Positions 18,760 to 52,611 of a DNA stretch of 64,000 bases are shown here, one piece after another (within the stretch, counting starts at the first letter, position 1; every line of letters starts with the position of its first letter). The stretch spans positions 29,913,511 through 29,977,510 of the forward strand of contig NC_068983.1 of assembly GCF_001194135.2 (NCBI RefSeq), written 5' to 3'. A program made the position numbers and the translations under genes. This DNA is from Octopus bimaculoides (lineage: Eukaryota). A model generated the notes under the pieces. The model saw only the letters and a program-made list of their open reading frames with translations, did not search any database and had not been told where the DNA came from.

Positions 18760-18799
<40 letters not shown>

Positions 18800-22336: not shown

Positions 22337-22459
<123 letters not shown>

Positions 22460-32899: not shown

Positions 32900-33114
32900 G
32901 AATGAAAATGCTAATTCTAACTATACTACGGATTTCATCTACCAATTGTTCTCTGAAGAAGGCAAAGGTGTATTTACAACTCGTAAAAATGTCTTGGGTC
33001 ATATGCAGCAAGGAGGTGTCCCAACACCATTTGATAGAAACTTTGGTACAAAAATGGCTTCCAAAGCTATCGACCATCTAATTGCACAACTTGAAGAACA
33101 TACCCGCCCTGATG
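32900..33114 (+). CDS. Pfk: Pfk exon 19 ([12 protein letters not shown]...[16 protein letters not shown]...RPD-G)
   Basis: tttgaag| acceptor, |gtaatt donor. Confidence 0.97.
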
Positions 33115-33302
33115 GTAATTATGTTGTTAAGGATATAATTTTTATATTTTAAAAGAATGACTAATGAATTGTGAAAATAAGTAAATATTAATTTGATCCT
33201 TCAGACTATTATTTCAAAGTGTAACTTACTAAAATATTTTGCATTTACATTAAGCTTTACAAGTATGCTACTTTTCTCATTAAAATTTATACTTCTTTTC
33301 AG

Positions 33303-33408
33303 GAACTGTCTTTACTTCGCAGCTTGAGACTGCTACACTTCTTGGAATGCAAAAACGTCATTTGTGCTTCACTCCAGTCATGGAGCTAACTCAATATGCT
33401 AATTTTGA
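33303..33408 (+). CDS. Pfk: Pfk exon 20 (TVFTSQLETATLLGMQKRHLCFTPVMELTQYANF-E)
   Basis: cttttcag| acceptor, |gtaagt donor. Confidence 0.95.
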
Positions 33409-33956
33409 GTAAGTGTTTAAAATATATCTTTGATTTTACACATCTACAATGTTGTACAATGGGTGTAAAAGGGGCCAAACATCTAACCATTTAGTCTTCA
33501 ATTAAAACATATGCTACAGCTGTTGTGATGTGCTCTCGGTAAAGCACATATCTAAGCTTATCTGCAGAATTAACAAGAACACTTACTTCATGCTTATGTA
33601 TAGAATGAAAATTCAGCTGTACAATTACTCTGATAGTAGGCAAATATCTAAATTTGTGAAATCCATCACAGACGTTGGAGCAATGGATTATAAAATGGTG
33701 AAAACCAATCATCATTAACATCATTATTTAATGACCACTTTTCCATGCTTGCATGGTGCAAATCAAATTTTTGAGGTACATTTTCTGCTGCCAGATGCCC
33801 TTTCTATCACCAACTCTTGATTGTTTCCAAGCAAGGTAATATTCCCCTTAACCAGACATGTTTTCACAGAAGATTGGAAATGACAGACAACTGTAAATGA
33901 ATGTCACCATCATGCAAGTGCTATCTCATGAAATCAAGGCAAGGTGACATTAACAC

Positions 33957-34102
33957 ACATACATACATACATACATACATACATACATACATACATACAT
34001 ACATACATACATACATACATACATACATACATACATACATACATACATACATACATACATACATACATACATACATACATACATACATACATACATACAT
34101 AC
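33957..34102. repeat. (ATAC)n tetranucleotide microsatellite, about 36 units, in Pfk intron 20
   Basis: Perfect run followed by (GT)n. Confidence 0.95.
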
Positions 34103-34507
34103 GTGTGTGTGTGTGTGTGTATGTAACTTTTAATTTAAAAGTTGCACGTGAAAGGAAAATCTAGGATTTCAGTGGGAACTGAATTTAGGATGTAAGAGAG
34201 ATGAATTCAGTAACTATATTTTTGATAAGAACTATGTTACTAGATATTACTCAAGTGAATTTTATTGGAAAAAGAAATTACCGTTTAAAACATTATTGGC
34301 TTTGAAAATCCAGTGTAAAAAATATAGTTTATGATCTGATAAAAAAGAGTTATCTAAAATTTAAACACTGAGAAAGATTTGAAAATTTACTACCAATCTT
34401 TTTTAAAATTAAATAGAAAATAGTTTTTAGCTCTCTTTATTATTTAAATTTTAAATTATTTTGATAATTTTTTAAAAAATCTTTCCTTTTTTTTCTTCCC
34501 ATTCTAG

Positions 34508-34646
34508 GAAACGTATTCCTAAAGAACAATGGTGGCTAAAACTACGTTCACTGTTGAGAATCTTGGCCAAGCACGAAACCGTGGCCTATCACACAGAAGC
34601 TGTATCTGCTGGTGTTGATGAGGTAGAAGATGAAGATAACATTTAG
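34508..34646 (+). CDS. Pfk: Pfk exon 21 (KRIPKEQWWLKLRSLLRILAKHE...VDEVEDEDNI*)
   Basis: cattctag| acceptor; TAG at 34644-34646; possible internal donor GAG|gtagaa after 34622. Confidence 0.95.
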
Positions 34647-37600
34647 TTACCTTTCTCCCTATATTTATCAGACATTTATCTTTGTTTTGGATATTTTTTG
34701 TTTGAAAACTGTTGCTTTTCCCCTTCATGAACATTTTTCTGATTTAGATTTACAGCATCAAGAATAGTTTTATTGACTTGGAATTTTGAATATAATAACG
34801 CTATTTATTTGAAATATATTTTTCAAATTGTAAAATATATATTCTATCTATATCCTCAAATAATGTTTACATCCTTTAAATTACGTTACTAACAATTTTT
34901 TAAGATTATTTCGAATTTCTTATAGAAAAATGTCTCAAAACGGGGTAGATTTATAATGCAGTGTTTAATTCTAAAAGTGATCAAAATTGTCTCGAAGCAT
35001 ATTGGTTTCAAGTAACTTATTCATGATAATTTTACTAAAATGCTTAGTAAAATACAAGTGGAATTTAAAATTGATAACTATTAGTATTCCATCGCCAAAC
35101 CAAAATTTTACCTCCAAGTTGTATTCATCTTTAACCTTGTTTTGTTATTTTCATCCTTGCCTATTTGCTTTTTGCTGATCTCATTTGTATGTTATTTAAA
35201 AGGGTTTTATTTAAGTTAAGAAACTATTAATTTTTTTAAAATTAAGTTACATTTTAAATAGTCTTTCAATTATAAATTATTTAGTTAATTTTCTAATTCA
35301 ATTTGTTTTAACACAATGCTACTTTTTATATTTTTGTATTTTTTATAATTTAATGAAATTTGGTTTCAATTAAATCTTAATTACATATTCTAAGAATATG
35401 AAATTCTTATAGGAATACTTTGTATGCTTTTAACATTGATCTTTTTCATAATCGCTGTAGCATTGTTTAAAAATGCATCAAAGTATTTCAAATTAATCAT
35501 CAACTCTTTAGAGAATTGATATTTTTGACAAATAGTATGAATCAGAATAAATTTGCAAAAATGATTTTAGATGAAAAACAAAAGAAGCAATGTAATTTGC
35601 AAGGTGTTAAATGACTAAAAGTTTGAAATTGACTTTAGGAATAATGATGTATTAATATCAAATGAAATAAATTTATTAGCTTGCTTAATTTATTGATACC
35701 CGTGACGAATAACTTATATAGAAACAAAAGTAAATGTTTCAAACATATCTTATATTTAATTTTACATAGTTGTTACTTGCTTATCTGTGATATTGTTATA
35801 GCTGTTAATAGATTTTTGTGATCGATTCTAAAAGGAATAAAAGCCAAAATAGAAGATGAGCAGAATGAACAAAATTTTAGGAAGCTTTCTGCTAGAAAGT
35901 TGTTTTTTATGATAAACTGATTTGGTGTCATCATCATTTCCCTTTTTAATAAATCACACAATAATTACTTGTCTAAACTAATGGCTATAATTAGTTTAAT
36001 ACAATAAAGATCTGTTTTATTTTATCTATTCCAAATCTTTTATGTATATTTCTGTACAATACTCTGTTAGTTTGCTGTTAACTGTTTTGTTAGTAAACAG
36101 GAGTTTGTAATTTAAATAAATAATTGAAATTATCAGTATCACTTAAAAAAAAAAAAAGAATAAGAAATAATATTTGATATAAATTATGTTTTAATTATTT
36201 TAATCATTAGCTTATATTTTGTACCTTTTTTCACCTTTGAGGAAATATTTTTTAAATCTAGAATTAGAATGAAAACATTTTAGTCTGGGAGAAAGGTAAT
36301 CTAATTTGCTTGAATATTATTCAATCTAGAAAAAAATATTCGCTCCATTGATATCTGATTTCTATCAGAGAAACCGTTTCTGTGAAATATTCTGTAACAA
36401 ATAAAGCAATTCTTGAAAACTTTCAATATTTCTCTTCTCATTTCTGCTTGCTGCCTCTTTCTTTCCCAACTTCACTGCCATTACCTATCCAGGCTTTACA
36501 AAAGCATACACTGCTTCTCCTTTTACTTTTCCCTTTCTATCACTTTATCTTTTCCCCTTTTATCTATTAGGTTATATCAAAAAATTTTTGACTTTAAAAT
36601 TAAGGTTAAAAACTTCCTGTATAATCCATCAATGTTTATTAATATATCAATATACCTATCTTACTTCAGTCTATTGAACTACAAAATATTATTGACTAAG
36701 CACAAATCAAATCTGAAGGTGCTTTACTTTAAGTATTAGAAGGGATGGAATTTATAATCATGTGATTTGTAAAAGCTATTATATTCATATTCAGTGTGTA
36801 ATGGTATATATACTCTAAAATATAAAATATACAATAACAATTTTAGAATATTTGGTAAAAGAAGACATGTTTTGATAATATAAATCTACATTTCAACCTT
36901 AGATATGAAATATTTTATTCTCTAAGTTGATAAGTTTTATCTTATTGTTTGTTTCTTTTATATTTTTAAATTTCTTCAAGAAGCCTTTCTCACTCCTTCA
37001 GTTAGGATGACGTACAAAAATCAGCTTATCACAACTGTACTGTAGACTTAATTTCTCTTTACTTGTTTTGTTTTTTATTTTCTTTAGAAAGTTACAGAAC
37101 TGGAGTTAATAGAAAACTCTTATTTCAAGTAGAAATTGTTTTGATACTTTCAGGTTGCAGATTATCTGAAGTTTACACTTTAATATTGTTTTTTTTTTTT
37201 GTTCGTTTTCTTTTGTTTTGTTTTGGGGGTTTTTTTTCAAATTTATTTTGAAATATCAAGATTTTATTTAATTAATATCATCCCAATTGATATCATTCTC
37301 ACTTTTAACAGTAAAAACTGAATCTTTGTATGCAAATGCTTTTCCATTCTTTGATTTTAAGTTCACAATAATAAGTAATTCAATGATTTTAGTTTAATTT
37401 TCTTCATACTGAAACATTTTCTGTAAAGTCTAACTTCCTATGATATGGTTTAAGTATCTTATCATTGTACTACTCTTTTTCAATTACCAAATACTATCAA
37501 AAATGGAGACTTATGTGTTCATGAATGCCTCTTATAATGGTTCCTTAATATAAACATGACTCCTTCGTAAACTGACCAATACCTTTCTAAATTCATTCAA

Positions 37601-38879
37601 TCAATCTCTAGTTCTTGTTGGAAATATCTATTTCATTATTTTCTAGTTGCTGCAAGACATTTGTATATTATATTTCTGACATAATTTACCTCTTGTCATA
37701 AATAAAAGCAGGGAGCCAAGAACTGTCTCTGCACTTATTTGATCTGCTAAAAATACAATATCACCTTGAATTCACACCTTACCATTTTAAAAATGGAAGG
37801 GTACAATGGGTAATGTAGTCATAGATATCTTATAGTTGATTGGATGATCATGGTTGGAATACTTTGATCTTAAGTCTATTCATCAGGGACTAAATAACAA
37901 CAAATCAAAAGCAGAATTTACTATCAATTTTGCACCCTAGACTACCACCAGCTCCACCACTATCACTAATTAACTCTACTCAGGAAGAGGAATGAAGAGT
38001 TAAATATACTTTGTCTGATTTATGTTGTTGCTTTTTAGCTTCCCAGATCAGACCTGGTTGTGTGGACTTATGATTACAGACATTCCAACCACTATCTTTC
38101 TTTCAGAAGTAACCTATTATCATCATCATTATATTTACATCCACCTTGGCATGAGTTTGATGGGTTTTCACAATCTGAATCTATTATTATTTGGAGTTGC
38201 CATCTTCCTAGATAGATAAAAGGATATCTCACTCACACATTTCAACTACTCTGTAGAGTTTATTGGATGCATTTTATCATGACATCAACACTAAAGATAT
38301 TGAGACTAGAATCCTCTCTATTGTATGTTGTCTTCATTCATTCACCAATCACTTTACAAATCATTCTGGATACATTTTACTACAGCACCAACATTGGAGA
38401 GATTGCTTTCTTTCCTGGAAAACTAAGAGTCCTCTTTACTCTATATTGTTTTTTTCCAAGGCAAGCATCACTGAGAGTATGGATAAAGGAGTGTGATGAC
38501 TAAGAGGGTGGAAAAAGAGTGAATGTGAGGTGGGGGGGACAGCAAAATGATGATAGCGGAGGTGGTAATGGAGGAGAAATAGTGATAGCTATATTTTGGT
38601 TGTTGGTAAGGAGATTGAATGTAAAAGCAGCATAGTCAGTGTAAAGGAATAGCAATAAAGATGTCCTGAAAGAAAGCAAGTGATAGATAACATTAGAGAC
38701 ATGTAATAGTAAGAAATATATACATGGGGAAAAAGAAAGATGGCTAATAATAGAGAAGGGTGATGATGAATGAGGGTACTGAATATAGACAGATGTGAAG
38801 CCTTTCCTCATTACACAGACATTGTGATAGATGATGGAAGGATTGAATGCAGATTAAATACTATGTCACATAACACAGG

Positions 38880-40130
38880 CAGCATGTTACAGTGAATAGG
38901 ATAGAGAACGAGTGAGATAAAGTAATGAAGGTTCTATCCACTTCAAGCAACCAGTACATCTTTATATAACTGGCATCTTCCATATGCATCATTCTTGCAC
39001 GCTACATCTCATCATTTGTGTTCTGTTATTCATTAGTTCATTACATGTCCATTGGAGCATGTTCACTCAATTGTTTTCCTATCTATCCCAAATCTTCCAT
39101 ATTCAAGGCCCAAATCTTGCTACCGTGTAATGCTACACTTGGCAATCTGCCCTTCAGGCTGAGAGAGAAACTTCTTGCTGCGAGCAAAAGTAATAACACC
39201 TTGGACTTTTTCCACCCCATTCCTACCCTAGCTACTATGTATTCTGTACACCCACTTCCACTACTAATATTAGGTCACCTAAGTGACCAAAGTTATCAAC
39301 TAGTTTTAGAGAGCCGAAATTTATTTCATGTATATTCTTATTTCATCTACAACATACAAAGTCTAGCTTCTCCATTAACCAATCTGTGATTCCACTACAC
39401 CTTTCATGTATCCATTGTTTATATTAGGTCTATCATATAAAATTTCTACATACTGCTTTTTTGTCTATCATGCGTGACCATTTCCCAGATGGTCGCGGGG
39501 TCATGTCCTTTTTTTCTTGCTTACTTTGACTTTTTGATTTGTGTCCATACATGAAACTTCTTTAAGCTTTCGCATGATGAAGCCGAATCCTCTTGCTGTA
39601 CAAGTTTTCTCCCTCTCTGAAGGTGACACAAGGTGTCTGCAGTGACAAGGGAGAAAACTTGTACAGCAACATGATTCACCATCAGTGTGTTAAAGGTTAA
39701 CTCTACAAATTGAGCTGTAAGACCTAGGTTATCAGCATCCATGAGTTTCTGTGGATAGTCAGCATTAAATTTATCTGCTTTGGTTTGGAGGACTAAAGTA
39801 AACGGAAGACTGTTGGGGGTTGAGACTGAGCCCTGGTGGTCTACCTGCATGTATAATTCATTTCTGAACTCATTGTTAGTTCTTACTTTGATGACTACTC
39901 CTCTGTACGTGGTTTGTATGGTCCCTACATGCTCTTCATCTGGCCATAGCTCCCTTAATACCCCTCCAGATTTCATAGTGTAGAATCCCATCAAAGGCCT
40001 TCTCCAGGTCATTGACGGATAAGTACAGGGGCTTCTAGCTAAGTATTTCTTCTACAGTTGTTTCACTAGAAAGATAGCAACAATAGTACCTCTTTCTTGA
40101 ATAAAGCTAAACTGCACCTTATCTCACCTG
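38880..40130 (-). mobile_element. RTE-clade LINE ORF2 relic (RT domain)
   Basis: Minus-strand DLEKAFD (39990-40010), VDHQGSV (HQGSVLSP-like) and MDADNL (YADD-like); frameshifted; accounts for the 163-aa ORF 39521-40012. Confidence 0.8.
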
Positions 40131-41055
40131 ATTCTCTTCCTAATTAATTGTGCAATTCATAGTCTAGTAAAACAATTTCTGTATATACAAAATTTAATAG
40201 ATCTAATTTTATTCTTCATTTCTACCATAATGCTAAGTGAAAATAAAGAATAAAAATAAGATATAGCTTTGTTATGGTAAAGCAAAGCAGGAAATTAATT
40301 TATCACATTTGTTAGGGCTTAATTACAAATACAGGAAGGCAATTGTGGTGGGGGTGCTTTATTGTAGACTGGATTATGCATTTCTATTACATATCCACTC
40401 ACACATACACATTATATATATACAATTTGGAAACGAGCAAAAGAAAATTAACAGAAACAGAAGTCTCCCATCAGCTGTGAACCTGGATGTCATGACAGTT
40501 TTAGCACTTCAGGATAGAACTGTATTCTCTGGTGGTGACAATAGCTTCAAAGAGAAATACTGCTAGAGAAGAGTATCCTTTTTGTGTCCTGTATATTGGT
40601 ATTATGTATACACTACCCTGTGTCTATTTTTAACTCTCTCTAATAGTATTTCCTTCTGAAAGTAATGGAAACCTGATAGTTTCAGGGTCTTCTCTGATTT
40701 ATCTTCTCTCTCTCTCTCTTTCCAATTTCCTTCTATCTCTGCTTCTTCCTCTCTTTTCAGTTTCTCCCCCCTTTCCTTCTAATCCACCTTGCTCTCTGTA
40801 TCTATCTTGCCCATGTTCTTTTTATTCTTTATTACTTTCTAATCACTCATGGTATTTTTCTTATTCTTTGAAACTACTGGCAACCATGTGGTTCCAGTTC
40901 CAACCTCATTGCACATTACCCTACAGGGCTTGTCTATCATAGCCTTGGGCTAACCAATGCTTGGAATTCAAGGAACTGCAGAAACTTGACATTATTTGTG
41001 TGTGTGTGTGGCTTTGATAATACAAACAGGATATTTAGAACTCAAAATATGACAC

Positions 41056-41090
<35 letters not shown>

Positions 41091-41189
41091 TAATCAATAG
41101 AAGTTACAAAGTGTCCCAAGAGCCAAGAATTTTATACATGACATTTCTGAAACTTTTGATGTAGATTAAAATAATAATGATAATAATAA

Positions 41190-41801
41190 TTAGTGTGTGT
41201 GTGTGTGTGTATATATGTATATATATATGTGTGTGTGTATATATGTATATATATATGTGTGTGTGTATATATGTATATATATGTGTGTGTGTATATATGT
41301 ATATATATATATGTGTGTGTGTATATATGTATATATATGTGTGTGTGTNNNNNNNNNNNNNNNNNNNNNNNNNNNNNNNNNNNNNNNNNNNNNNNNNNNN
41401 NNNNNNNNNNNNNNNNNNNNNNNNNNNNNNNNNNNNNNNNNNNNNNNNNNNNNNNNNNNNNNNNNNNNNNNNNNNNNNNNNNNNNNNNNNNNNNNNNNNN
41501 NNNNNNNNNNNNNNNNNNNNNNNNNNNNNNNNNNNNNNNNNNNNNNNNNNNNNNNNNNNNNNNNNNNNNNNNNNNNNNNNNNNNNNNNNNNNNNNNNNNN
41601 NNNNNNNNNNNNNNNNNNNNNNNNNNNNNNNNNNNNNNNNNNNNNNNNNNNNNNNNNNNNNNNNNNNNNNNNNNNNNNNNNNNNNNNNNNNNNNNNNNNN
41701 NNNNNNNNNNNNNNNNNNNNNNNNNNNNNNNNNNNNNNNNNNNNNNNNNNNNNNNNNNNNNNNNNNNNNNNNNNNNNNNNNNNNNNNNNNNNNNNNNNNT
41801 A

Positions 41802-41840
<39 letters not shown>

Positions 41841-41880
41841 ATGTATATATGTGTGTGTGTGTATGTATATATATATATAG
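41190..41880. repeat. Compound (GT)/(AT) microsatellite spanning a gap
   Basis: gtgtgtgtatatatgtatatatat modules on both sides of the N-run. Confidence 0.9.
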
Positions 41881-42240
41881 GTGCAAGTGTAGTTGTGCTG
41901 TTAAGATTTCTTCTCAACCATATAGTCTTGGGTTCAGTTTCACTGCACAGCTCCTTGGGCAAGTGTTACCCTAGCCAATTAAAGCCTTTTGAGTGGATTT
42001 GAGTGATAGAAACTGAAAGACTGTTATATAAATGTGTGTTTGTCCCTTACCACTGCTTGTCAATTGGTGTTGGTTTGTTTATGTTCCTGTCTCTTGTCAG
42101 TTTGGCATAAGAGAGCAATACACTAAGTACCAGGCTTTAAAAATAAATACTGGGATCAATTTGTTGAACTAAACCCTTTGAAGCACTGCTCCAACTTGCC
42201 CAGGACCCAGTGACTAAAGCAAGTAAAAAAATAAAAGAAT
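41880..42240 (+). mobile_element. SINE family A, diverged
   Basis: Degenerate head, body and tail. Confidence 0.7.
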
Positions 42241-42571
42241 ATAGTTATATATATGTGATTCCGTGTATATGTAATGTGTATATATGTTACTGATGTATGA
42301 GAGCACAAGGTATAATCATTGAGAAAATCAAGAACACACTTTTTTTTAAACCAACTGTAAAGATATTTTATCTGGGTAATATGTAAGTAACTTAAAATAG
42401 GCACACACTTTTCATTGTCCAAAAGTTAGCTCATGCAAAGTACTTTCATTTTCTGTCTTTGCAACAATCAACTTTTGGAATAGTTTCATTCTCTCTGACC
42501 AATATCATCTTCAGTAGAGTTCATATATTCATTGTCCGCATGCATTTTAGCTATTGATTACAGTAAACAGT

Positions 42572-42959
42572 GTGGAGGCGCAATGGCCCAGTGGTTAGGG
42601 CAGCAGACTTGTGGTCATAGGATCGCGGTTTCGATTCCCAGACCGGGCGTTGTGAGTGTTTATTGAGCGAAAACACCTAAAGCTCCACGAGGCTCCGGCA
42701 GGGGATCGTGGTGAACCTTGCTGTACTCTTTCACCACAACTTTCTCTCACTCTTACTTCCTGTTTCTGTTGTGCCTGTATTTCAAAGGGCCAGCCTTGTC
42801 ACACTGCGTCACGCTGAATCTCCCCAAGAACTACGTTAAGGGTACACGTGTCTGTGGAGTGCTCAGCCACTTGCACGTTAATTTCACATGCAGGCTGTTC
42901 CATTGATCGGATCAACTGGAACCCTCGACGTCGTAAGCGATGGAGTGCCAACAACAACA
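42572..42959 (+). mobile_element. SINE family B with 12-bp TSD
   Basis: Near-identical to the 16874 copy; TSD ACAGTAAACAGT at 42560-42571 and 42960-42971. Confidence 0.92.
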
Positions 42960-45249
42960 ACAGTAAACAGTATCTTGAATCTTCTCAACTCATCAGCTTT
43001 ACTTCAGCATATAATTCCAAAGTTTTTAACTAGTTAGAAAATCAATCTTTTCAGTGGAAATAGCCAAGTTTTAAAACTGTGTCTGAACTCTTTTATATGC
43101 CTACAAAAAAAAAACATTCTACATATTTCTTTCTGCTGGTAACATTGCTGATTCATGAAAATACGCCAATTTCCATTCTCATCATATATTTAAGTGTAGC
43201 CTTGCACATTCTTTTAGTTATAACCATCCCTAGAATGAGGATAACTGAAACTGGGACCAGAAAGTAGTATTATTGAAGCTTTTTAAAATATGGATAATTA
43301 TCACCTGAAACCTTGATTACAGCAGCTTAAATTGAAGATTAAGAGATTTTTATCTCTTTCATCTCAACATAGTTGCTTTTATCCTCTAGCTTTCTAAAAA
43401 GAACTGTGGTGAGTTCTTTGAAAAGAAAGAAAAATCCATTTTTTTCTTCTTTCCAAAGACCTCATTACTAAATGATACTTTCCCTTCAAGAACCTATCAA
43501 AAGTTTGTCTTGAAGTTCAGTTCACAATATTTGCAAAGCATCTCTTTAAGCAAACGCTTTAGCCCAAGAGTAACAACTTCAGCATAAATTGTTTTACCAA
43601 GATGGTGGTATTAGATATCTATTTTACTAGTATTTGGGTAAATTTCTTTAACATTCATCTCTCTTATCTATACTAGCATGGTTTATCTGAGCATAACACT
43701 TACTATCAGATATCACTTTTTGAACTCGTCAACACAACCCCTTTTCTGGACTGTTCTTTAGCAACATTCAATGTCAGTAGCAGCTGATAGATGTTGGACA
43801 CATTTCATTGCAGTCCATCATCTGGTACACACAACAACAGAAAATCAGCCATCTTTGCTGTATATATCCTTAACATGGTTTTTAAGACCAGATGAATTTC
43901 TTATTACAAGTCTCTATATAGTGTGCACTAATAATTCAAATATATAATTGTGAAATAATTTACCTTTTGTTATTAAGACAGATACTAATCATTGATACAC
44001 AAGATATCTTCATTAGAAAAAGGTAACAATTATTTTTTTCAATTTGTTGGTTCTGTATTTATCTGCCTAGCAGCTTTATTTGTTTTCATTTACTTCTCAG
44101 GATTCTTGCTATATTTTTTTATTGAAACATATAATTTGTCCTATCAGCCATTCTATTTGAATAATTAGAAAAAAAAACATTTCTCTTTTAATTACATTTT
44201 ATGTAAAAAGCTTTTTTACTTTGTCAAAGTATTTTTTGTTTAGCTGTCTGTTGCGTTTTAGTAAAAAAGGAAACTAAGTTATGAAATTGCAATTTGCCAT
44301 ATAAAGTAATGTTATGACTGTCATAGCTTAGAGTTTGTTTTAATATAATTAACTTAACATAGACATAATTGAAGCAGTTTACAGCTTAGCTATTCTTTAT
44401 ATAGAGCTGCCATAGAAACAGAAACGTTACAATAGTTAAAAAATATACTTCATGTATATAACATGTTGAGAAGGAGAGTTCATTGTTTTTTTGTGCAATA
44501 AAAACTGGATTTCACCCAATGTGTGTTTGTGTGTGTGTGTGATAACTCACTCATCAAATTTGCTAAACTAGTGTAAGGTTATCTTTTTATTGTGGGGAAA
44601 GAGCTGCACACACATCAGACTTATTCTCTCATCCTTACTCAATATGCTTGATAACAAAATAAAGTTAAAATAAGGATACAGGAGATTACCAAAATGTCTG
44701 AAGGTACCCCTGGAATGATTGGACAGCACTTGCTCTCTCACCAATATTTACTACATTGGTGAACCCAATTCATCAAACAGCTATGAAATACTACAAATCT
44801 GTGTTCTAAACTTACTATCACCACGCTGTCAATATTTCATTCAGTTGTGAACTTAAAGATAATCCTTTCTAGCCTACTATCCAGCTTTTCATTGTTTGAA
44901 ATACAGTTTCCTGACGCTCAGCATAATGTTAGAGGCTACATGTTTCAACTACATTATCATTTCACTTTACCTAAAATTAGCATATTCCAGCTATGAAGTA
45001 CCAGCTCAGATGCAGCGGTCACTGGGCAACTCAGATTTATCTTTGCAGGGAACACCATGAGTATCATACCAAAACCACACATGAACTCATCAATGATCCC
45101 TCATCATCATTAGCAACTTATCATCTTTCACAATTGCAGTTTACACTAAGAACTCTATGATAATTTTTGTTTTCACCTTTGTGACTAGCTCAGCTTATCA
45201 CTAGAAAACATGTAGAAGCTAGGAACATGATCTCATATTTGAAGGTATA

Positions 45250-45512
45250 AAAATAATAAATAAATGCGCCATTTTAAAGCCTAGCCAGGCTCATGGGCCC
45301 GATTTCCCGGTTTCTATGGCGTATATGTTCCCCAGCTGGACGGGACGCTAGTCCATCACAGCGATACTCATTTTTGCCAGCTGAGTGGACTGGAGCAACG
45401 TGAAATGAAGTGTTTTGCTCAAGAACACAATGCGTCGCCCAGTCCAGGAATCGAAACCACAATCTTACAATCATGGTGCTGACACCCTAACCACTAAGCC
45501 ACATGCCTCCGC
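45250..45512 (-). mobile_element. SINE family C with 13-bp TSD
   Basis: Reverse complement of the 26301 copy; TSD ATTTGAAGGTATA at 45237-45249 and 45513-45525. Confidence 0.9.
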
Positions 45513-47486
45513 ATTTGAAGGTATACTAAGTTATTAAATCCATTACTTATTCACTTTCGACAAACTGACTTGTATGAAAGTAAACATGTCATGCTGACCC
45601 ACTTGCATTTTACTCATACATGCACAGACCTCATGCAGTTCCACCTATGTTTGTACACACATGCACATATGCAAGTTCACTTAGATTTTTGTGCACACAT
45701 GCCAAACTTGCTTGCAACTTGTGCCTTTGTACATGGCAGATTGATTGTCCTTTTTAGACCAGAAGAACTCTACACTTATGGTGGTAGGCAGAAAATAAAA
45801 AAGCATTATCATAATTTATTGTCGTTATGTCCATGCATCCATATTGTTTACAGATGGTGGTAAAAGCAGTGATGATAAAATTTTTTTTTTTTAAATATAC
45901 TTTTTGCATGAAGTCCCTTTCTGATATTTGTTTTACACAGTCCTTTGTCACTCTTACTGCCACAAATGCAGAGAAAATGTGAATGCCAAATTAGAAACTG
46001 TATTCAATGATGCTATTGTTCACCATTGCAATAAAATATAATTTTGTTTTAGAGCACGAAACCCCTCAAAATCCAGATAAACTATACAAATTAAAGTATA
46101 TTTTTGTATTTGTTATTTCATTGGATATGGTGTTGAAGTTTTATTCATTCTGTTGTTCGCTGATATAAGTTTTATTGTCAACAAGGTCTGCTTTTCTCGT
46201 TTGTGTGATATTGTTACATCTGCTTGGTCTTATTTTATACTGTAAACAAGTTATCTCTATAAGTAATAGCAGTATATATTTTTATTTAATTTTCAATTTC
46301 GTTTTGCATGGTTCAAATTTGATTGATAGAAATATTAGTTGTTGCACTTTTAAAATATTAGATATCACATTACTGTATCACTCTATAAGTTCTGCATCTC
46401 TGTATTTGCTGTGTGTGTTATACTCCTATTTCCCCTAGAGTAATATGATTTTGGATGAGATGCTTTATGGCATTTGTTTTGGCTTACTACTTAGTACATT
46501 CTGAGTTTAACTCCCACCTCCTGTCACCACAGAATTTTTTTTAAATGTATTTTTTCAGACTTTGTGAAAAGGATGATAGGCCTGGGAAGTTTTTAAGCCA
46601 GTGCTCAAGTATTTCAGCTGATCAATGCCAACAAATCAGCTAACAGGAGGAAACTCAAGGGAATTTTCAAGTAACCATCAATGAATGACAATTACTCTAT
46701 AGATATTGCTCAATAGGTATTCTTCTATTACATTTGTGTATAGGTATTGCTTTACTATATTGCTTTATAGGCATTTCATGATCTGTATCGCTCTACTATA
46801 TTGCTCTATAGCTATTACATTATTGTATTACTCTACTATATTGCACTACTATATAGCTCTATATATATATACATATATTGCACTATTTCACTCACATTGT
46901 TAATAATCTTGGGAAAACAGGAATGTCATTCTTCTCATATGCCTGCAATTATTTTTACATCATATCCATGATTATAAGACAGTGTTGCTGCTTAATATCT
47001 TTTTTTGTGGCTCTTTACTCATCAAAAATAACCAAACTTTTAAAAAAGTAAAATTGATTGATTGATATTTCTTCAAGTTTTCCTTCTCAAGGACCTATCA
47101 CACTTGTATAAACTTCCATAATATAAAATGGTAAGATGAATCATTTTTAATTGTGTATTTGACACATCAACTGCATGCTTTGTATTTTTTTATAGCCTAA
47201 TAGCAATGCACATTTCTCCTGATTCATTATTATGTACATAAAATTTCAAGATAATATGAATTAAGTTTTTGAAAAAATTATCAACTTTTGTCATACGTGT
47301 TGCTATTTGTTGTGTTATTTGAAATAATATATTTGTGTATATTCAGAAGATTTCTGTGTCATATACTGCATGTTAAAATTAGAAGTTTTCAAAAGCTAAA
47401 CATATATATATATATATATATATATGTGTATATTCAGAAGATTTCTGTGTCATATACTGCATGTTAAAATTAGTTTTCAAAAGCTA

Positions 47487-47487
<1 letters not shown>

Positions 47488-47572
<85 letters not shown>
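47488..47572. repeat. (TA)n microsatellite
   Basis: Perfect run. Confidence 0.95.
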
Positions 47573-47576
<4 letters not shown>

Positions 47577-47666
47577 AGTTACTTTACTAATTGAAAAATT
47601 AAAATTGATATTAAATTTGAGCAAATAAGTATACAGTTAACATAAATGAGTGCAATACTACCTTAA

Positions 47667-47836
47667 CCCTTATTCAAACCAGCCAAATCTGGCCTCTCCC
47701 ACCAACTCTAAAATGACATTCTAAAAATTAAATTACATCATCAAATTCTCAAAGCTAGGACATAACACATGGCTAATTCAAAACAATGTCAATAAATAAA
47801 TATTAAATCTGGCAGAGTAATCTGAATGTTAAAGGG
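47667..47836. mobile_element. TTAA-flanked piggyBac-like MITE
   Basis: TTAA|CCCTT...AAGGG|TTAA, 170 bp. Confidence 0.65.
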
Positions 47837-47984
47837 TTAATATTTAATCTGATGTTGAGAAAAGAACATGTTATTGGTAAGGTTTATTATAACACTTTCC
47901 TGATTTTAGAATGCATTTTTGTTTAAACAATAATTTCCCTATTGCCATTTTAACTATTTTGAAAAGTAGCTTCTGCTTTTGATA

Positions 47985-48021
<37 letters not shown>

Positions 48022-48329
48022 TATAAAACTAACTCAGAATTCAGTAGAAAAAATATAAACTTCATAAAAAAAATAAACATAAAACATTAAAAAAAGAATA
48101 CAAATGATATTCCTTGTAAAAAAAATGTACTACTTAGTATAATTAAAGGCAACTAAAATAAGATTTTCATTAAGTCATCATTAATTAATGTTAAGTCATA
48201 ACCTAAAAATGAGTTGGTGATTCATTTATAGATGTAACAAGTTATAAAAGGATGAGAATAGAATGGAAACTATAGAGAGTGAATAGGTAATAAACTTTAG
48301 GGAGACAGGGGGAGGCATGGGTGGTAAAG

Positions 48330-48645
48330 CTGGTAGAATATTTGGCAACTAATAAAGAGTTTGGTGTCTTGTAATCTGTCACCAGTTTTGCGTTGTGATC
48401 ATAGCCAAGTCACAACTTAGTAGTGGAGTCCAGCAGAGTAAGTAGTGAGTAGCAGTAATGTAATCTGTTGTCTTCCAGCAAACAAACCAATTCCTTCTAT
48501 GGGAAATACTAGTTTGTGATAGCCTAGCATCCTATCCCTAAGAATATTTATCTCTCTTCTGCTTAACATTGCAGATATTAGAATTGAGTAGATTTGTATT
48601 CCATGAAAGATAAACTATAACATCTAGGAATCAGGCATGAATATA
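48330..48645 (-). mobile_element. Possible LINE endonuclease relic
   Basis: Degenerate LDVIVYLSWNTNL...LLDSTT resembles a CR1-like APE domain; weak. Confidence 0.35.
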
Positions 48646-48956
48646 GAAGGTTGTTGTTTAGTGCCAACAGACTAGTAATCAAAGGCGTTCGACCTTGACT
48701 TCTAGTATGTCCAGGACAATAATATAAAGTGTGTGCTTTTTGAAGACAGTTAACTGTAATATGAGGGAAATTTTGCTGTTACTTCCACCAGATCGAGTAA
48801 TCAAGTAGAGATTCTCGTTCTGACTCATTTAGAAGGAGATTTAAACAATGAGTAAAAATAGTAGTAAATTATGAAACACTTAAGATTATAAATGTTAGAA
48901 AAGAAAAAAACAATCAAAATGTTGCTGAGGTTCTAAAATTTGCTAGTGTTCAATGA

Positions 48957-49080
48957 CATCATCATCATCATCATCATCGTTTAATGTCCGCTTTCCATGC
49001 TAGCATGGGTTGGACGATTTGACTGAGGACTGGTGAACCAGATGGCTACACCAGGCTCCAATCTGATTTGGCAGAGTTTC
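48957..49080 (-). mobile_element. Family D 3' fragment
   Basis: Reverse complement of the 3' block. Confidence 0.85.
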
Positions 49081-50640
49081 AGAAATACAAATGTTTATTT
49101 AAAGAACCTCACCATCTTCCATTTATTACAAACAGTGTTTTATTTAAAGGATTCTCCTTACTGCAGGACAGAGACCAACCAGCCATATCAACTTCTTGTA
49201 GCCTCTTATTACTAGCACTGTTAAAGCTACATCTTTCCAATTTGTGTTTCTTTGTTTTAAAGAATTGAACCTAAGCACAGACTTCCTACAAATCCTAAAT
49301 ATGTTTTACTGTGGAATACTGCCCTCATGCATAGAATAGTAACATTTATTCTTGTCAGCGTCATTCTACATCACAACCAGAGGATTGTTATGTTGTATTG
49401 GGATGTACATTTTTTGTACTGCTATGACATTCTTAATTGTTTCGAACCTCTAAGCTGCACACTGCTTCGTTTGAAATCCCTTTATTTAACATGCTTCTCT
49501 GGTTCTTGCTAACTTTCTTCTTCAGTATAATGATAACTAAGAGTGTTCTCAATAGCTATTAATGCTTTTGGTGTTTGGAGATATTTATATTTATAAAAGT
49601 GTAAAAAAAACAATACTTGTTAAAATTTCAGTAGAAAATGATAAATGAAAGAATGCTACTAAGACTTGAATGATCTCTAAGTTTGTTATATAGGTTCTAA
49701 TATTTTATAATATTTTATATATATTTAATAAAAATCTTTAACAAATATAATATGAAGTAAATGTTTCATACAGACAGTATTATCATTATATTCTAAATTC
49801 TTTGAAACACAAAATACTTTATCTGAACTATTCATACCTTATTAACTAGTCAAATAATTCTTGTTGGAATCTTACTAAAATGACAATAAATAACTTCCTC
49901 TTACCTTGAAAATCCAGCCTTCCCTGTAGAATATTGATTACAGCCAAATCATATTGCTGTTAGTGATGTTTTACTTGGACTTGTTTAAATAATATACTTT
50001 TAAAACAGTTCTATTTTTACAGTTTTGTATCCTGTGACTGTATTTTGGAAATATTTGCTTCATCAGTTAAACAGTTTAACCTTTTATTTTAAACAGTTTT
50101 GGTGTTGTTTTCTCATTAATATTACTTTAAACAAAGTCTGACACAAATTAGGTTAACTTGTTTTTATAAATCAGATGAATATATATTCTTGTTATCTTAG
50201 GTAATTAGCATAAGAGTTCATAATGTTATCAGACTTGATAAGGTTTTCTTTTTATTTATTATGTAACAAACAAGCTTTCAATATATTTTTTGATCTTGGA
50301 AAAGGAATAGCAAAAATTAAAAAGACTCTTTTTGTAAAATTTTTGTTGACTGCCAGAAATATGGAAGAAGTTTGGATACCATGGTTATAAAAATAGAGTA
50401 ACTTATGATTCTATTTTGAATTGCTCAAGATAAATTACTCTTCTGAGATTCTGCTGTTCAGACATTTGTTTTCTTATTTTAGTATATTAATATTTCAAAT
50501 TCATTTTACAGGTTAATATCATCTGCAGATTTACTCAGCTCTATAAATTATCTGAGATATCTATATAGTATTGGCCATTTGACCATAGATTTAGAGAAGA
50601 GTCTACTTTTATCTAAGTTGATAATTGTGCTTGTCTAAGG

Positions 50641-51062
50641 CAGTGGTTCCTAGACATTTTTCTTACGCTACACTTGAGATCAAATAAAACATTTTAGTGC
50701 ACTTTATATTAAGGAAAAGTATTTATATATGTATCAGACTGAACTGGTTACAACACCCAAGGTACCTTGTCTGTGGGGCAACTTAGCCATCCAGGAGGAT
50801 TACAATGTGGACAGTAGCACAAACTGTGACAGTAGAGAGGCATCCAGGAATCATGACCTGGATGCAGTCCAGCCCCCTTATAGTTAAGGGCCAAAGCACT
50901 TGCATAAGGGGAGCTTGTTCTCTAAAGACTTTCTGCTGTTCAGCAACCCCTGCAGTGTTTTACTACTCACATATTCTTTTAATATAATTTTATTTTCACA
51001 GCACAGCAAGTTACATCCCACAACTCACCACCATGTCACTGCATACCATTTGGGAGCCACTG
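50641..51062. mobile_element. Older hAT-like MITE
   Basis: Termini CAGTGGTTCC... / ...TTTGGGAGCCACTG; TSD not matching. Confidence 0.5.
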
Positions 51063-51545
51063 ATCAATTTATACAAAATAATGAGTAGCAGGAACTCAAA
51101 TATTAGTACAATAATATTCTCAAATTAAAAAAAAAAAATCTCTTTCATATTTACTGTTAAGTAAACTTGTCTCTCTTGATGCTCATTTTGGGTCTGTAGA
51201 TCCTCTCCAAAATTTACAATCAACACTTTATGATTGCTGATGAGGTACCATTTTTAGAAACATTCTCTATGGTCAGTAAGACTCTAATTTCCAGTATTCT
51301 GGAAACATCTTAAATTTTCGTATTTGTACTTCATTCAAGTTATCTTTACTATAGTAGACCCAATTAGAAAAATGTAACTAAAAATATTCTAAAAATGAAC
51401 AGTTCTACAATTATTTCAACATAACATTATTGGTAGCATTTTCACTGCATCTTTGATTTATTATTATTGTTATTATTATTATTATTATTATTGTTAATGC
51501 ATCTTCTTTTGGTAACATTATTCTTTTCTTTACTTTTCTCCTCAG

Positions 51546-51608
51546 AACTTGGCAAACGAGGAAGATGACAACCCAAAGTCTTTCCGTCAACGCTTTTCTT
51601 TTGCATAA
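51546..51608 (+). CDS. Pfk: Candidate distal alternative terminal exon of Pfk (NLANEEDDNPKSFRQRFSFA*)
   Basis: Strong acceptor (branch-like ggtaac, tract ttcttttctttacttttctcctcag); phase 0 fits the internal donor after 34622; AATAAA at 52006-52011. Confidence 0.55.
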   Translation, partial: NLANEEDDNPKSFRQRFSFA

Positions 51609-51876
51609 CTGATACTGGTTATTGAGTCATGGAAAAAAAGCTATTACCTGACTTGGTATTTATAACAGACGATGCTATCAAATTTTATAAAATCTTACTA
51701 GAACTAGGACCAGATATAAAGAATTTCAGCGTAGAAAATTATTTAGGAATACCTTGGCTTCTTTCTTTTATTTTCATTGCATTTTTGCATGCAAGATTTT
51801 CCTTTTCACAAAATTCACTCACACGCATCACATGCATGCATGTACACACCACACACTTTAAATATTTTATCTGAAG

Positions 51877-51908
<32 letters not shown>

Positions 51909-52160
51909 CATAAATATATAGTATTAGGGAAAAGAACCAAGGTTTATGAACTCATCGATGAAAATCCACTGTCACATATAGAAAAAAATTTATAATTAGA
52001 AGTACAATAAATAAGTATAATATAATACAAAGTAAATACCATAAGATCAAGATAGTAAAATGACTACACGTGTTTCATAACCAATTTTCAAATAGAAAGA
52101 AATTTAAATCGATTAATAGTTTTTACCTGTAATTTTGAATTTTATCCCTAATATTATATA

Positions 52161-52282
52161 TAGAAACTCTGCCAAATTAGATTGGAGCCTGGTGTTGCCA
52201 TCCGGTTTCACCAGTCCTCAATCAAATCGTCCAACCCATGCTAGCATGGAAAGCGGACGTTAAACGATGATGATAATGATGA
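52161..52282 (+). mobile_element. Family D 3' fragment
   Basis: Same 3' block. Confidence 0.85.
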
Positions 52283-52611
52283 CACACACACACACGCACA
52301 CGCACACGCACACACACACCTAGAATACTGAAGCATTGATAAAACGCAAATTTTTTTTTTTTTTTTTCGTTTTGCCTTTCTAAATCTTTGACTTTTAGGT
52401 ATCAGAATTGTAAAATATATTTTATGAAAAGAGAGCAACTAACTACTCTGAATAAACATATTTATCTAAAAATGGAATATGCTTATTCATACTTTAAACC
52501 ATTACTCCAATAAATGCAAATATAAAAAAATTTTTATGTTGTTATTTCTTCTAATGCATATTACAACTGTTTTTATTTTTTTAAACTATCCTTCATATCT
52601 TTTATCTGTTA

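What the first reader, a model, noticed from the sequence alone, without database searches (positions are those of the whole stretch)
34620..51608. Hidden distal terminal exon could give Pfk a switchable C-terminal tail with a kinase motif
Seen: an isolated strong acceptor at 51545 (TAAC branch, ~25-nt pyrimidine tract, CAG) opens a 20-codon frame NLANEEDDNPKSFRQRFSFA*, with AATAAA at 52006. Exon 21 has an internal phase-0 donor-like site GAG|GTAGAA after 34622. Joining them replaces ...GVDE-VEDEDNI* (815 aa) with ...GVDE-NLANEEDDNPKSFRQRFSFA* (828 aa); both tails start with a similar acidic patch. Known: the vertebrate PFKM tail carries a basic phosphorylated RKRS site and modulates allosteric inhibition. 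Inference: alternative last-exon choice across a 17-kb intron makes isoforms with or without a basophilic R-Q-R-F-S-F site (PKA/PKC-like).
Basis: partly seen in the sequence, partly recalled or inferred. Interest (0 to 1): 0.8.

Follow-up and report, generated by a model that had tools for sequence, protein, structure and literature searches.

The report
Annotated alternative tail of octopus phosphofructokinase
The predicted far-downstream exon is real and gives octopus phosphofructokinase a second C-terminal tail, but this 828-residue product is already a public RefSeq and UniProt entry, and whether the tail is a kinase-controlled switch is untested.

Summary
Every letter-level claim holds. 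A 21-coding-exon PFK gene (+ strand, 1872-34646) encodes 815 aa. Joining GAG|GT after 34622 to the AG at 51545 gives 828 aa ending NLANEEDDNPKSFRQRFSFA. Both products are already public, matched exactly: 828 aa is XP_014767605.1 / A0A0L8I1M7 (Octopus bimaculoides isoform X1) and 815 aa is XP_014767606.1. The exon is therefore annotated, not hidden.

It is also conserved. O. vulgaris, O. sinensis and Argonauta hians have models with homologous distal tails. Cuttlefish RNA-seq contigs (Sepia pharaonis, S. esculenta) carry spliced mRNAs whose match to the window stops exactly at 34622 and continues into a homologous 20-codon tail. S. esculenta shows three mRNA forms with identical upstream coding sequence: read-through (VEDEDNI*), distal tail, and a 39-nt stop-containing cassette.

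The assembly gap lies in an intronic TG/TA microsatellite. Gap-free O. vulgaris and O. sinensis sequence bridges it.

The architecture is a composite terminal exon: a weak internal donor competes with a proximal 3' end.

All six tails keep R-x-[R/H]-F-S-hydrophobic-x-COOH, with the Ser always third from the end. That fits a PKC-like site poorly matched to PKA, and equally a 14-3-3 or PDZ C-terminal motif. Function is untested. The AATAAA at 52006 is not conserved.

The parts
1872..34646 (+). ATP-dependent 6-phosphofructokinase (PFK1) gene, 21 coding exons: 1872-2049, 13541-13614, 14625-14702, 15481-15670, 16539-16704, 18235-18279, 20420-20528, 20634-20729, 22337-22429, 22831-22956, 23718-23782, 25647-25722, 26043-26189, 27459-27529, 28269-28359, 28876-29028, 30694-30858, 31822-31886, 32900-33114, 33303-33408, 34508-34646. 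The product is 815 aa.
   Evidence: tblastn plus junction picking. The product is identical to XP_014767606.1 / A0A0L8I1S4. Pfam PF00365 matches in two stretches, E 1e-192.
34508..34622 (+). Part of exon 21 shared by all isoforms (E)KRIPKEQWWLKLRSLLRILAKHETVAYHTEAVSAGVDE.
   Evidence: Cuttlefish mRNA contigs align to the window up to exactly 34622.
34620..34628 (+). Internal phase-0 5' splice site GAG|GTAGAA. It is weak because it lacks the +5 G.
   Evidence: It scores 4.9 bits on the gene's own donor matrix, where real donors score 2.0-11.0. The context GATGAGGTAGAAGA is identical in O. vulgaris, O. sinensis and Argonauta hians genomic DNA and in Sepia esculenta mRNA.
34623..34646 (+). Proximal tail VEDEDNI plus TAG, read when the internal donor is not used. 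This is the ancestral molluscan PFK C-terminus.
   Evidence: The same or nearly the same tail is found in chiton, oysters, scallops, mussels and Solemya.
34647..35200 (+). Conserved block after the proximal stop, probably the proximal 3' UTR. The first poly(A)-type hexamers are ATTAAA at 35369 and AATAAA at 35546.
   Evidence: 97.5% identity to O. vulgaris over 554 nt, against an intron mean of 90.0% with sd 5.3. The true 3' end was not determined.
34623..51545 (+). Alternative intron, 16,923 nt as assembled, removed to make the 828-aa isoform.
   Evidence: Exact match of the joined product to XP_014767605.1. The region is colinear with O. vulgaris and O. sinensis.
41349..41799 (.). Assembly gap inside a TG/TA microsatellite. 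It is intronic.
   Evidence: The flanks are adjacent across a short (TA)n run in gap-free L001 and L002.
51513..51545 (+). Branch-like TAAC (51513-51516), pyrimidine tract and CAG acceptor of the distal exon.
   Evidence: It scores 7.9 bits on the gene's own acceptor matrix. Identity to O. vulgaris is 97.8% over 51500-51545.
51546..51608 (+). Distal terminal exon, coding part: NLANEEDDNPKSFRQRFSFA plus TAA. Ser826 is the conserved Ser.
   Evidence: Homologous tails: NLANEDDENPKALRQRFSFA (O. vulgaris and O. sinensis), EIIQNTEEKIIRQHFSLL (Argonauta), YLFKEEEMNPKVLRHRFSLA/V (Sepia) and YIFKMEEEMNPKILRHRFSIY.
51609..52530 (+). Probable distal 3' UTR; its end was not determined. AATAAA at 52509 is conserved in O. 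vulgaris; AATAAA at 52451 is not.
   Evidence: The Sepia distal-form mRNAs have 3' UTRs of at least 740-950 nt.
46559..46567 (+). Candidate start of the exon behind a third public model, A0A0L8I1I6 (810 aa, ending ...GVDE-TL*): ttttttcag|ACT TTG TGA. The alternative candidate is 38819 (cacag|ACA TTG TGA). This assignment is uncertain.
   Evidence: Pattern scan. The AG at 46558 scores 8.6 bits. Both candidates keep an early stop in O. vulgaris.

Best explanation
Shown: the last coding exon of the Octopus bimaculoides PFK1 gene is a composite terminal exon. If the weak internal 5' splice site after 34622 is not used, translation reads seven more codons (VEDEDNI*, the ancestral molluscan end) and the mRNA ends at a proximal site. 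If it is used, about 17 kb is removed and a distal terminal exon (51546 onward) supplies a different 20-residue tail and a different 3' UTR. Both products are already public database entries. The same choice is seen in spliced mRNAs of cuttlefish, so it predates the octopus-cuttlefish split. Cuttlefish also insert a 39-nt cassette with a stop codon between the donor and the distal exon, which makes a third, short tail.

Inferred: the ratio of isoforms is set by competition between splicing at the weak donor and cleavage/polyadenylation at the proximal site, as in the immunoglobulin mu secreted/membrane switch. The swap changes the extreme end of the PFK C-terminal tail. In human PFKL the positionally equivalent tail straps the regulatory domain to the catalytic domain in the inhibited T-state. 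The distal tail is predicted to be disordered and keeps one short motif, R-x-[R/H]-F-S-hydrophobic-x-COOH. Most likely this is a short linear motif, a phospho-acceptor Ser and/or a C-terminal docking site, that tunes ATP inhibition or the location of the enzyme in the cells that make this isoform.
For: - Exact look-up: the 828-aa join is XP_014767605.1 / UniRef100_A0A0L8I1M7 and the 815-aa form is XP_014767606.1 / A0A0L8I1S4.
- Orthologous models with both tails exist in O. vulgaris and Argonauta hians, and a distal-tail model in O. sinensis.
- Donor and acceptor are identical in O. vulgaris and O. sinensis DNA. The donor context is also identical in Argonauta DNA and Sepia mRNA.
- RNA-seq contigs L004-L006 hold a complete 828-aa CDS in 3.4-3.6 kb. 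L006 comes from SRR3011300, which is Sepia pharaonis. They align exon by exon to the window, the match ends exactly at 34622, and they continue into a homologous 20-codon tail.
- Sepia esculenta larval runs give read-through, distal and cassette forms with 0 mismatches over the 2424 nt upstream, so these are isoforms of one gene.
- K, R, F and S are invariant in six tails, and the Ser is always third from the end.
- The donor is weak at 4.9 bits.
- In the AlphaFold2 model the core is confident (pTM 0.84) and residues 808-828 have pLDDT below 50.
- The human PFKL tail stabilises the T-state, and deleting it relieves ATP inhibition (PMC11345425).
Against: - I had no RNA reads from O. bimaculoides itself. 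Usage there rests on annotation pipelines.
- Within Octopus the distal coding part is no better conserved than the intron (92.1% against 90.0% +/- 5.3). Four of its five differences change the residue, although none falls in the last eight codons.
- The 3' ends of both mRNAs in the window are undetermined.
- There is no evidence on tissue specificity. The cuttlefish runs whose source I could trace are whole larvae or whole animals.
- The tails of octopus and human PFK cannot be aligned, so the strap analogy rests on position only.
- Phosphorylation, docking and kinetic effects are all untested.
Confidence: 0.8

Rival explanations
1. The conserved end of the distal tail is a C-terminus-anchored docking motif rather than a simple kinase on/off site. 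It could be a class I PDZ ligand (S-x-hydrophobic-COOH) and/or a 14-3-3 mode III site (R at -4, pS-x-x-COOH). Either would place this PFK isoform on a scaffold or sequester it.
For: The tails vary in length (18, 20 and 21 residues), yet the Ser is exactly third from the C-terminus in all six. R at -4 and F at -1 are invariant and position +1 is always hydrophobic. The tail is predicted to be disordered, as short linear motifs usually are. The motif definitions come from my own knowledge.
Against: The last residue is A, L, V or Y. A and Y are poor class I PDZ ends. Only six sequences from two lineages were available. There are no binding data. This reading does not exclude phosphorylation; 14-3-3 binding would require it.
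Confidence: 0.25
2. The choice matters mainly at the RNA level. The two ends give different 3' UTRs, which could change stability, localisation or translation, and the coding difference is secondary.
For: The block after the proximal stop is the best-conserved non-coding stretch in the region: 97.5% over 554 nt, against 90% for the intron. The cuttlefish cassette form encodes only FLHHSTN* yet carries the whole distal exon as its UTR. Within Octopus the first 12 codons of the distal tail change freely.
Against: Frame, length (20 codons in both Octopus and Sepia) and the terminal motif are kept between lineages whose introns can no longer be aligned. That would not be expected if the peptide were irrelevant.
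Confidence: 0.2
3. The distal exon is an annotation artefact or splicing noise, for example a model wrongly joined to a stray exon, with no functional product.
For: From the sequence alone the acceptor is one of 22 equally good AGs downstream, and the donor is weak. AATAAA hexamers are common in this window.
Against: Public models from several sources (RefSeq XP_ entries, UniProt entries, and the O. vulgaris and Argonauta genome records) carry homologous distal tails in four octopod species. Complete spliced mRNAs appear in many independent cuttlefish runs. Motif and reading frame are conserved.
Confidence: 0.03

Closest known systems
RefSeq XP_014767605.1 / UniProt A0A0L8I1M7, ATP-dependent 6-phosphofructokinase isoform X1 of Octopus bimaculoides, with XP_029634457.1 (O. 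sinensis), CAI9720474.1 (O. vulgaris) and GAB1611013.1 (Argonauta hians)
   Same: The orthologues carry homologous distal tails.
   Different: Nothing differs in sequence. These are computed models without described function, and I found no paper on them.
Composite terminal exons, with the immunoglobulin mu heavy-chain secreted/membrane switch as the classic case (my own knowledge)
   Same: A suboptimal 5' splice site inside a terminal coding exon is followed by a few codons, a stop and a proximal 3' end. Using that splice site joins the body of the exon to far-downstream terminal exon(s) that encode a different C-terminus.
   Different: The protein here is a metabolic enzyme, not a receptor or secreted protein. 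The proximal poly(A) site in the window has not been mapped. No regulator is known.
Vertebrate PFK1 C-terminal tails: the PFKL T-state strap (PMC11345425) and the PKA site near the PFKM C-terminus (my own knowledge)
   Same: The tail sits at the same position after the conserved ...WWLKLRxLLxILAK helix. It is a variable region that controls ATP inhibition in human enzymes and is phosphorylated there.
   Different: There is no sequence similarity beyond LAKHE. Vertebrates get different tails from three paralogous genes, whereas cephalopods get them from one gene by choice of 3' end. The motif here has R at -4 and -2, not the R-R/K-x-S of PKA.
Other alternative PFK C-termini in molluscs: Pomacea canaliculata isoforms X2 and X6 (P0207, P0213)
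   Same: One gene has RefSeq models that differ at the C-terminus.
   Different: They branch earlier, right after LAKHK, and have unrelated tails (ELIAHEEGNVCPCQL and KSCTR). There is no distal-type motif, so this looks like an independent event.

Membership tests
Eukaryotic ATP-dependent 6-phosphofructokinase (PFK1, Pfam PF00365) | Two tandem PFK domains in one polypeptide of about 800 residues | tested here: met
   PF00365 matches in two stretches, E 1e-192, 639 bits against a cut-off of 30.9. The AlphaFold2 model has pTM 0.84.
Eukaryotic ATP-dependent 6-phosphofructokinase (PFK1, Pfam PF00365) | Close similarity to characterised animal PFK1 enzymes | tested here: met
   The C-terminal region matches human PFKM, PFKP and PFKL chains at E 1e-10 to 1e-14. 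Identity to mollusc PFKs is 70-75% over the full length.
Composite terminal exon / alternative last exon | A 5' splice site inside the coding part of a terminal exon that is used in some mRNAs and read through in others | tested here: met
   Sepia esculenta mRNAs with identical upstream CDS either read through GTAGAAGAC...TAG or are joined after GATGAG to downstream exons. In the window both products match public models.
Composite terminal exon / alternative last exon | A proximal cleavage/polyadenylation site downstream of the internal donor | tested here: inconclusive
   The cuttlefish read-through contig carries at least 405 nt of 3' UTR with an AATAAA. In the window there is a conserved block at 34647-35200 and hexamers from 35369 onward, but no 3'-end reads.
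Composite terminal exon / alternative last exon | A distal terminal exon with its own stop codon and 3' UTR | tested here: met
   The stop is at 51606-51608. Cuttlefish distal-form contigs have 740-950 nt of 3' UTR. The window's own poly(A) site is undetermined.
PKA (cAMP-dependent kinase) substrate site | Basic residues at -3 and -2 from the Ser (R-R/K-x-S-hydrophobic; my own knowledge) | tested here: not met
   Position -3 is Q or H in all six tails. Position -2 is R in five and H in Argonauta.
PKC-like basophilic site | Basic residue at -2 or -3 and a hydrophobic residue at +1, as in the R-F-S-F of MARCKS (my own knowledge) | tested here: inconclusive
   The pattern is present in five of six tails. 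It is a short, common pattern, and actual phosphorylation cannot be tested with these tools.
Homologue of the vertebrate PFKM C-terminal phosphorylation site | Alignable sequence around the site | tested here: not met
   HMMER alignments to human PFKM, PFKP and PFKL stop at ...ILAKHE(T). The resemblance is in position only.
14-3-3 mode III / class I PDZ C-terminal motifs | Ser or Thr one or two residues before the free C-terminus (S-x-hydrophobic-COOH; pS-x(1-2)-COOH; my own knowledge) | tested here: inconclusive
   The Ser is third from the end in all six tails, despite tail lengths of 18-21 residues. The terminal residues A and Y are atypical for PDZ ligands. Binding cannot be tested here.

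The most novel reading that the evidence does not exclude
Before octopuses and cuttlefish diverged, coleoid cephalopods acquired a splice-selectable short motif, ...R-x-R-F-S-hydrophobic-x-COOH, on the autoinhibitory C-terminal tail of their PFK1 gene, using a latent GT in the conserved Glu-Val codons. Phosphorylation of Ser826, or 14-3-3/PDZ docking at it, then gives cell-type-specific control of glycolytic flux. One gene with a choice of 3' ends would thus do what vertebrates do with the three paralogues PFKM, PFKL and PFKP. The stop-containing cassette would add an off position.
Probability: 0.3. Interest if true: 0.5.

Novelty: already known. Interest (0 to 1): 0.3.

Why it matters
For the scan, this shows that a reader working from raw sequence recovered a true 17-kb alternative splice to the exact residue. 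It also shows that the result repeats an existing RefSeq and UniProt model.

Biologically, the new part is comparative. The distal tail and the internal donor are shared by octopods and cuttlefish. The proximal tail is the ancestral molluscan one. The only strictly conserved feature of the distal tail is a Ser-containing motif fixed at the C-terminus. The PFK1 C-terminal tail was recently shown to hold human PFKL in its inhibited state (PMC11345425). A natural pair of tail isoforms from one gene is therefore a convenient system for testing how tail sequence sets ATP inhibition. No paper on it turned up in the held library.

Tried and rejected
- The search for homologous proteins with a hybrid C-terminus returned only 11 last-exon fragments of other animals' PFKs and none with the distal tail. 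It missed even the clusters later shown to contain it, so this negative result reflects the word index, not biology.
- The same tool given the six-tail alignment A1 found no candidate at all (after a rejected E-value setting).
- Argonauta DNA for the 826-aa model could not be fetched because the gene range is 108 kb. In the locus of the 815-aa model (L003) the distal exon is not within the 10 kb downstream. Argonauta therefore supports the tail at the protein-model level only, plus the conserved donor.
- blastn-short with the 39-nt cuttlefish cassette found nothing meaningful in the window.
- Phylogenetic footprinting within Octopus cannot judge the distal exon, because the whole intron is about 90% identical between O. 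bimaculoides and O. vulgaris.
- Run accessions for the third decapod-like tail (SRR24189505) and several other runs are not in the held papers, so those species and tissues stay unknown. The runs I could trace are whole larvae or whole animals, which gives no tissue information.
- Pfam found nothing in the mariner-like ORFs near 57 kb (one search was a coordinate error).
- I did not use the search of protein representatives. Clustering at 50% identity would merge all animal PFKs and hide the tails.

Full report
**1. The observation**

The last coding exon of a + strand gene starts at 34508 and ends ...GGT GTT GAT GAG GTA GAA GAT GAA GAT AAC ATT TAG, with the stop at 34644-34646. GAG occupies 34620-34622 and is followed by GTAGAA in phase 0. 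At 51513-51545 there is TAAC, a pyrimidine tract and CAG. From 51546 the frame reads NLANEEDDNPKSFRQRFSFA, then TAA at 51606-51608. AATAAA lies at 52006.

Choosing GT-AG junctions in the right phases gave 21 coding exons and a product of exactly 815 aa. The alternative join gives 828 aa. Pfam confirms a tandem-domain PFK (PF00365, two stretches, E 1e-192).

**2. The assembly gap**

The gap at 41349-41799 sits inside the proposed intron, so no reading frame crosses it. TG/TA microsatellite flanks it on both sides.

I fetched the orthologous loci of Octopus vulgaris (L001, OX597816.1) and O. sinensis (L002, CM016861.1). Neither contains any N. Window 34146-52927 is colinear with both at 85-90% identity. 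The two flanks of the gap map to adjacent, slightly overlapping positions in L001 (window 41228 to L001 63463; window 41840 to L001 63425). The sequence there is a plain (TA)n run.

The gap hides no unique sequence and does not disturb order or orientation. It only makes the intron length approximate: 16,923 nt as assembled, against 16,824 nt in O. vulgaris and 16,875 nt in O. sinensis.

**3. Sequence statistics alone**

I built weight matrices from the gene's own 20 donors and 20 acceptors.

- The internal donor GAG|GTAGAA scores 4.9 bits. Real donors score 2.0-11.0 (leave-one-out). It is weak, but it is the best GT in the exon.
- The acceptor at 51545 scores 7.9 bits, about the median for real acceptors. 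Twenty-two of the 1628 AGs downstream score at least as high.
- AATAAA or ATTAAA occurs 2.6 times per kb on this strand, so one about 400 nt after a stop is expected by chance.

The candidate could not have been told apart from chance on these grounds. The candidate exon is not a repeat within the window.

**4. What settles it**

An exact-sequence look-up found both products in public databases.

| Product | Public entries |
|---|---|
| 828 aa (distal tail) | XP_014767605.1, [quoted passage not shown]; UniRef100_A0A0L8I1M7 |
| 815 aa (proximal tail) | XP_014767606.1 (isoform X2 of an earlier annotation); A0A0L8I1S4 |

The window is therefore O. bimaculoides, and the "hidden" exon is an annotated one. 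Judging from the source lists, both models listed under the NCBI genome source (828 aa and a 768-aa form that starts in exon 2) carry the distal tail. The listed O. sinensis RefSeq entry with the distal tail (XP_029634457.1, 828 aa) carries no isoform label.

The same cluster holds these models:

- O. vulgaris: 828-aa and 768-aa models with tail NLANEDDENPKALRQRFSFA, and an 815-aa model with VEDEDNI.
- Argonauta hians: an 826-aa model with tail EIIQNTEEKIIRQHFSLL, and an 815-aa model with VEDEDNI.

Donor and acceptor, including TAAC and the pyrimidine tract, are letter-for-letter conserved in O. vulgaris and O. sinensis. The donor context GATGAGGTAGAAGA is also identical in Argonauta genomic DNA and in cuttlefish mRNA.

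**5. Transcript evidence from a distant lineage**

A search with the 828-aa protein returned P0021. It is 828 aa long, 86% identical, and known only from assembled sequencing runs. It ends ...GVDE-YLFKEEEMNPKVLRHRFSLA.

Its contigs (L004-L006, 3.4-3.6 kb) hold the complete CDS, so they are spliced mRNAs. They align to the window exon by exon, and the last match ends exactly at 34622. One run, SRR3011300, is Sepia pharaonis whole-animal RNA-seq (PMC5541922).

The members of that cluster show four ends after GVDE:

- VEDEDNI;
- YLFKEEEMNPKVLRHRFSLA or ...SLV;
- YIFKMEEEMNPKILRHRFSIY;
- FLHHSTN.

Several source runs are Sepia esculenta larvae (PRJNA844162 and PRJNA947123; PMC10466719 and PMC10571815). 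In that species three forms share a 2424-nt upstream CDS with zero mismatches, so they are isoforms of one gene.

The FLHHSTN form is the distal form with a 39-nt cassette spliced in between the donor and the distal exon. The cassette carries an in-frame stop. The distal exon then serves as 3' UTR.

Octopods and cuttlefish lie on the two sides of the basal split among living coleoids. By my own knowledge that split is of the order of 250-300 million years old. The distal exon and the use of this donor are that old.

**6. Which tail is ancestral**

The proximal end (V/F)EDEDN(I/A) is found almost unchanged in a chiton, Solemya, oysters, scallops, mussels and a unionid. It is the ancestral molluscan C-terminus.

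Among the listed isoforms of nine non-cephalopod clusters, none has a distal-type tail. Pomacea has unrelated alternative ends that branch earlier.

The donor's GT is the first two bases of the conserved Val codon after Glu. The splice site may therefore have been latent in the ancestral coding sequence. This is an inference; I read DNA only for cephalopods.

**7. How it most likely works**

The architecture is a composite terminal exon. A weak 5' splice site inside the exon is followed by a few codons, a stop and a 3' UTR. Far downstream lies a terminal exon with its own stop and UTR. In the classic case, immunoglobulin mu (my own knowledge), the outcome depends on competition between splicing and cleavage/polyadenylation at the proximal site. 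I infer the same here.

Support in the window is indirect:

- The donor is weak.
- The 554 nt after the proximal stop are 97.5% identical to O. vulgaris, against 90.0 +/- 5.3% for the intron. That fits a functional proximal UTR or regulatory region.
- The poly(A) sites themselves are not determined.

AATAAA at 52509 is conserved; AATAAA at 52451 is not.

**8. What the tail may do**

Human PFKM, PFKP and PFKL align with the octopus protein only as far as ...ILAKHE. What follows is the C-terminal tail: 15 constant residues (TVAYHTEAVSAGVDE), then either 7 or 20 alternative ones.

[quoted passage not shown] Deleting it raises F6P affinity and relieves ATP inhibition. The authors suggest that phosphorylation of the tail could displace it (PMC11345425). 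The octopus splice point falls roughly where the resolved strap ends. That comparison is by position only.

In an AlphaFold2 model built on a 48-sequence alignment, the core is confident (mean pLDDT 83, pTM 0.84). Residues 808-828 are below pLDDT 50. The distal tail therefore looks like a disordered segment that carries a short linear motif.

Across six tails the invariant residues are K, R, F and S. The consensus is K-x-hydrophobic-R-[Q/H]-[R/H]-F-S-hydrophobic-x-COOH.

- Measured against kinase consensus patterns (my own knowledge), PKA fits poorly because no tail has a basic residue at -3.
- A PKC-like pattern (basic at -2, hydrophobic at +1, as in R-F-S-F of MARCKS) fits five of six.
- The tails are 18, 20 or 21 residues long, yet the Ser is always exactly third from the C-terminus. 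That fits motifs read from the free end: 14-3-3 mode III (with the invariant R at -4) or a class I PDZ ligand.
- Within Octopus the first 12 codons of the tail change freely, with four conservative replacements. The last eight codons show no change. The numbers are too small for statistics.

A rival reading is that the main consequence is the different 3' UTR. No tool here can test any of these functional readings.

**9. Comparison with what is known, and verdict**

The feature is a true alternative last exon, correctly predicted. It is already present in RefSeq and UniProt and so is not new as an annotation. I found no paper that describes cephalopod PFK isoforms.

- conservation across coleoids;
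- the cuttlefish stop-containing cassette;
- the ancestral status of the proximal tail;
- the weak, perfectly conserved donor;
- the C-terminus-anchored Ser motif.

The kinase-switch idea remains a reasonable hypothesis, not yet backed by evidence. I rate the structure at about 0.95, the specific phospho-switch at about 0.3, and overall interest as modest.

Noticed in passing
L013 2575-2613 compared with L023 (Sepia esculenta mRNA contigs): A 39-nt cassette exon (TTCCTTCATCATTCAACTAATTGATCTGCATTGACAAAG) lies between the internal donor and the distal exon. It brings an in-frame stop (tail FLHHSTN*) and turns the distal exon into 3' UTR. This form was carried by more assembled contigs (18) than any other member of its cluster.
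   Followed up: partly
window 46559 and 38819: A third public O. bimaculoides model, A0A0L8I1I6 (810 aa), ends ...GVDE-TL*. Only two intronic acceptors fit it: ttttttcag|ACTTTGTGA at 46559 (8.6 bits) and cacag|ACATTGTGA at 38819. Either could be an octopus counterpart of the cuttlefish stop cassette. I could not decide between them.
   Followed up: partly
window 51897-52281: This 385-nt segment is present in O. bimaculoides but absent from O. vulgaris and O. sinensis, and it lies inside the probable distal 3' UTR. It holds a (TA)n run, the AATAAA at 52006 and a SINE-like repeat copy (52161-52283). That repeat has further copies at about 6130-6248, 13932-14041, 21796-21911 (-), 24732-24852, 29971-30091, 48962-49080 (-) and 56240-56342.
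   Followed up: partly
window 34647-35200 and 50200-50800: These blocks are markedly better conserved between O. bimaculoides and O. vulgaris (96-98%) than the surrounding intron (about 90%). The first is probably the proximal 3' UTR. The second, roughly 0.8-1.3 kb upstream of the distal exon, is unexplained.
   Followed up: no
window 34102-34146 compared with L001 48704-55605: O. vulgaris has about 6.9 kb, and O. sinensis about 3.7 kb, of extra sequence in intron 20 just upstream of the last exon, relative to the window.
   Followed up: no
window 13541 onward (exon 2): The 768-aa public models (XP_052822075.1 in O. bimaculoides, CAI9720476.1 in O. vulgaris) start at the Met of MNAAVRAVV in exon 2. 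That implies an alternative non-coding first exon. Both carry the distal tail.
   Followed up: no
window 2303-2614, 7372-7605, 16079-16408, 52750-53183, 53622-53995, 59909-60272 and others: A dispersed repeat family with a recurring open frame (...SYGDVNTPASVVKRCWG...) is present in many copies on both strands of the window, and in many places in the O. vulgaris and O. sinensis loci. It is probably a SINE or another transposable element.
   Followed up: no
window 57001-57174: An open frame contains ...LPHPPYSPDLSPTDYRFFKYLDTFL..., which from memory resembles the C-terminal part of mariner/Tc1 transposases. Pfam gave no hit at E <= 0.01, so this is unconfirmed.
   Followed up: partly
P0207 and P0213 (Pomacea canaliculata PFK isoforms X2 and X6): This gastropod PFK gene also has models with alternative C-termini, but they branch right after LAKHK and have unrelated short tails. 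It looks like an independent case of tail switching in PFK.
   Followed up: no
window 6931-7317, 15830-16035, 56229-56238, 59039-59533: Four further assembly gaps. The first two lie in introns 1 and 4 of the PFK gene and interrupt no exon of the model.
   Followed up: partly
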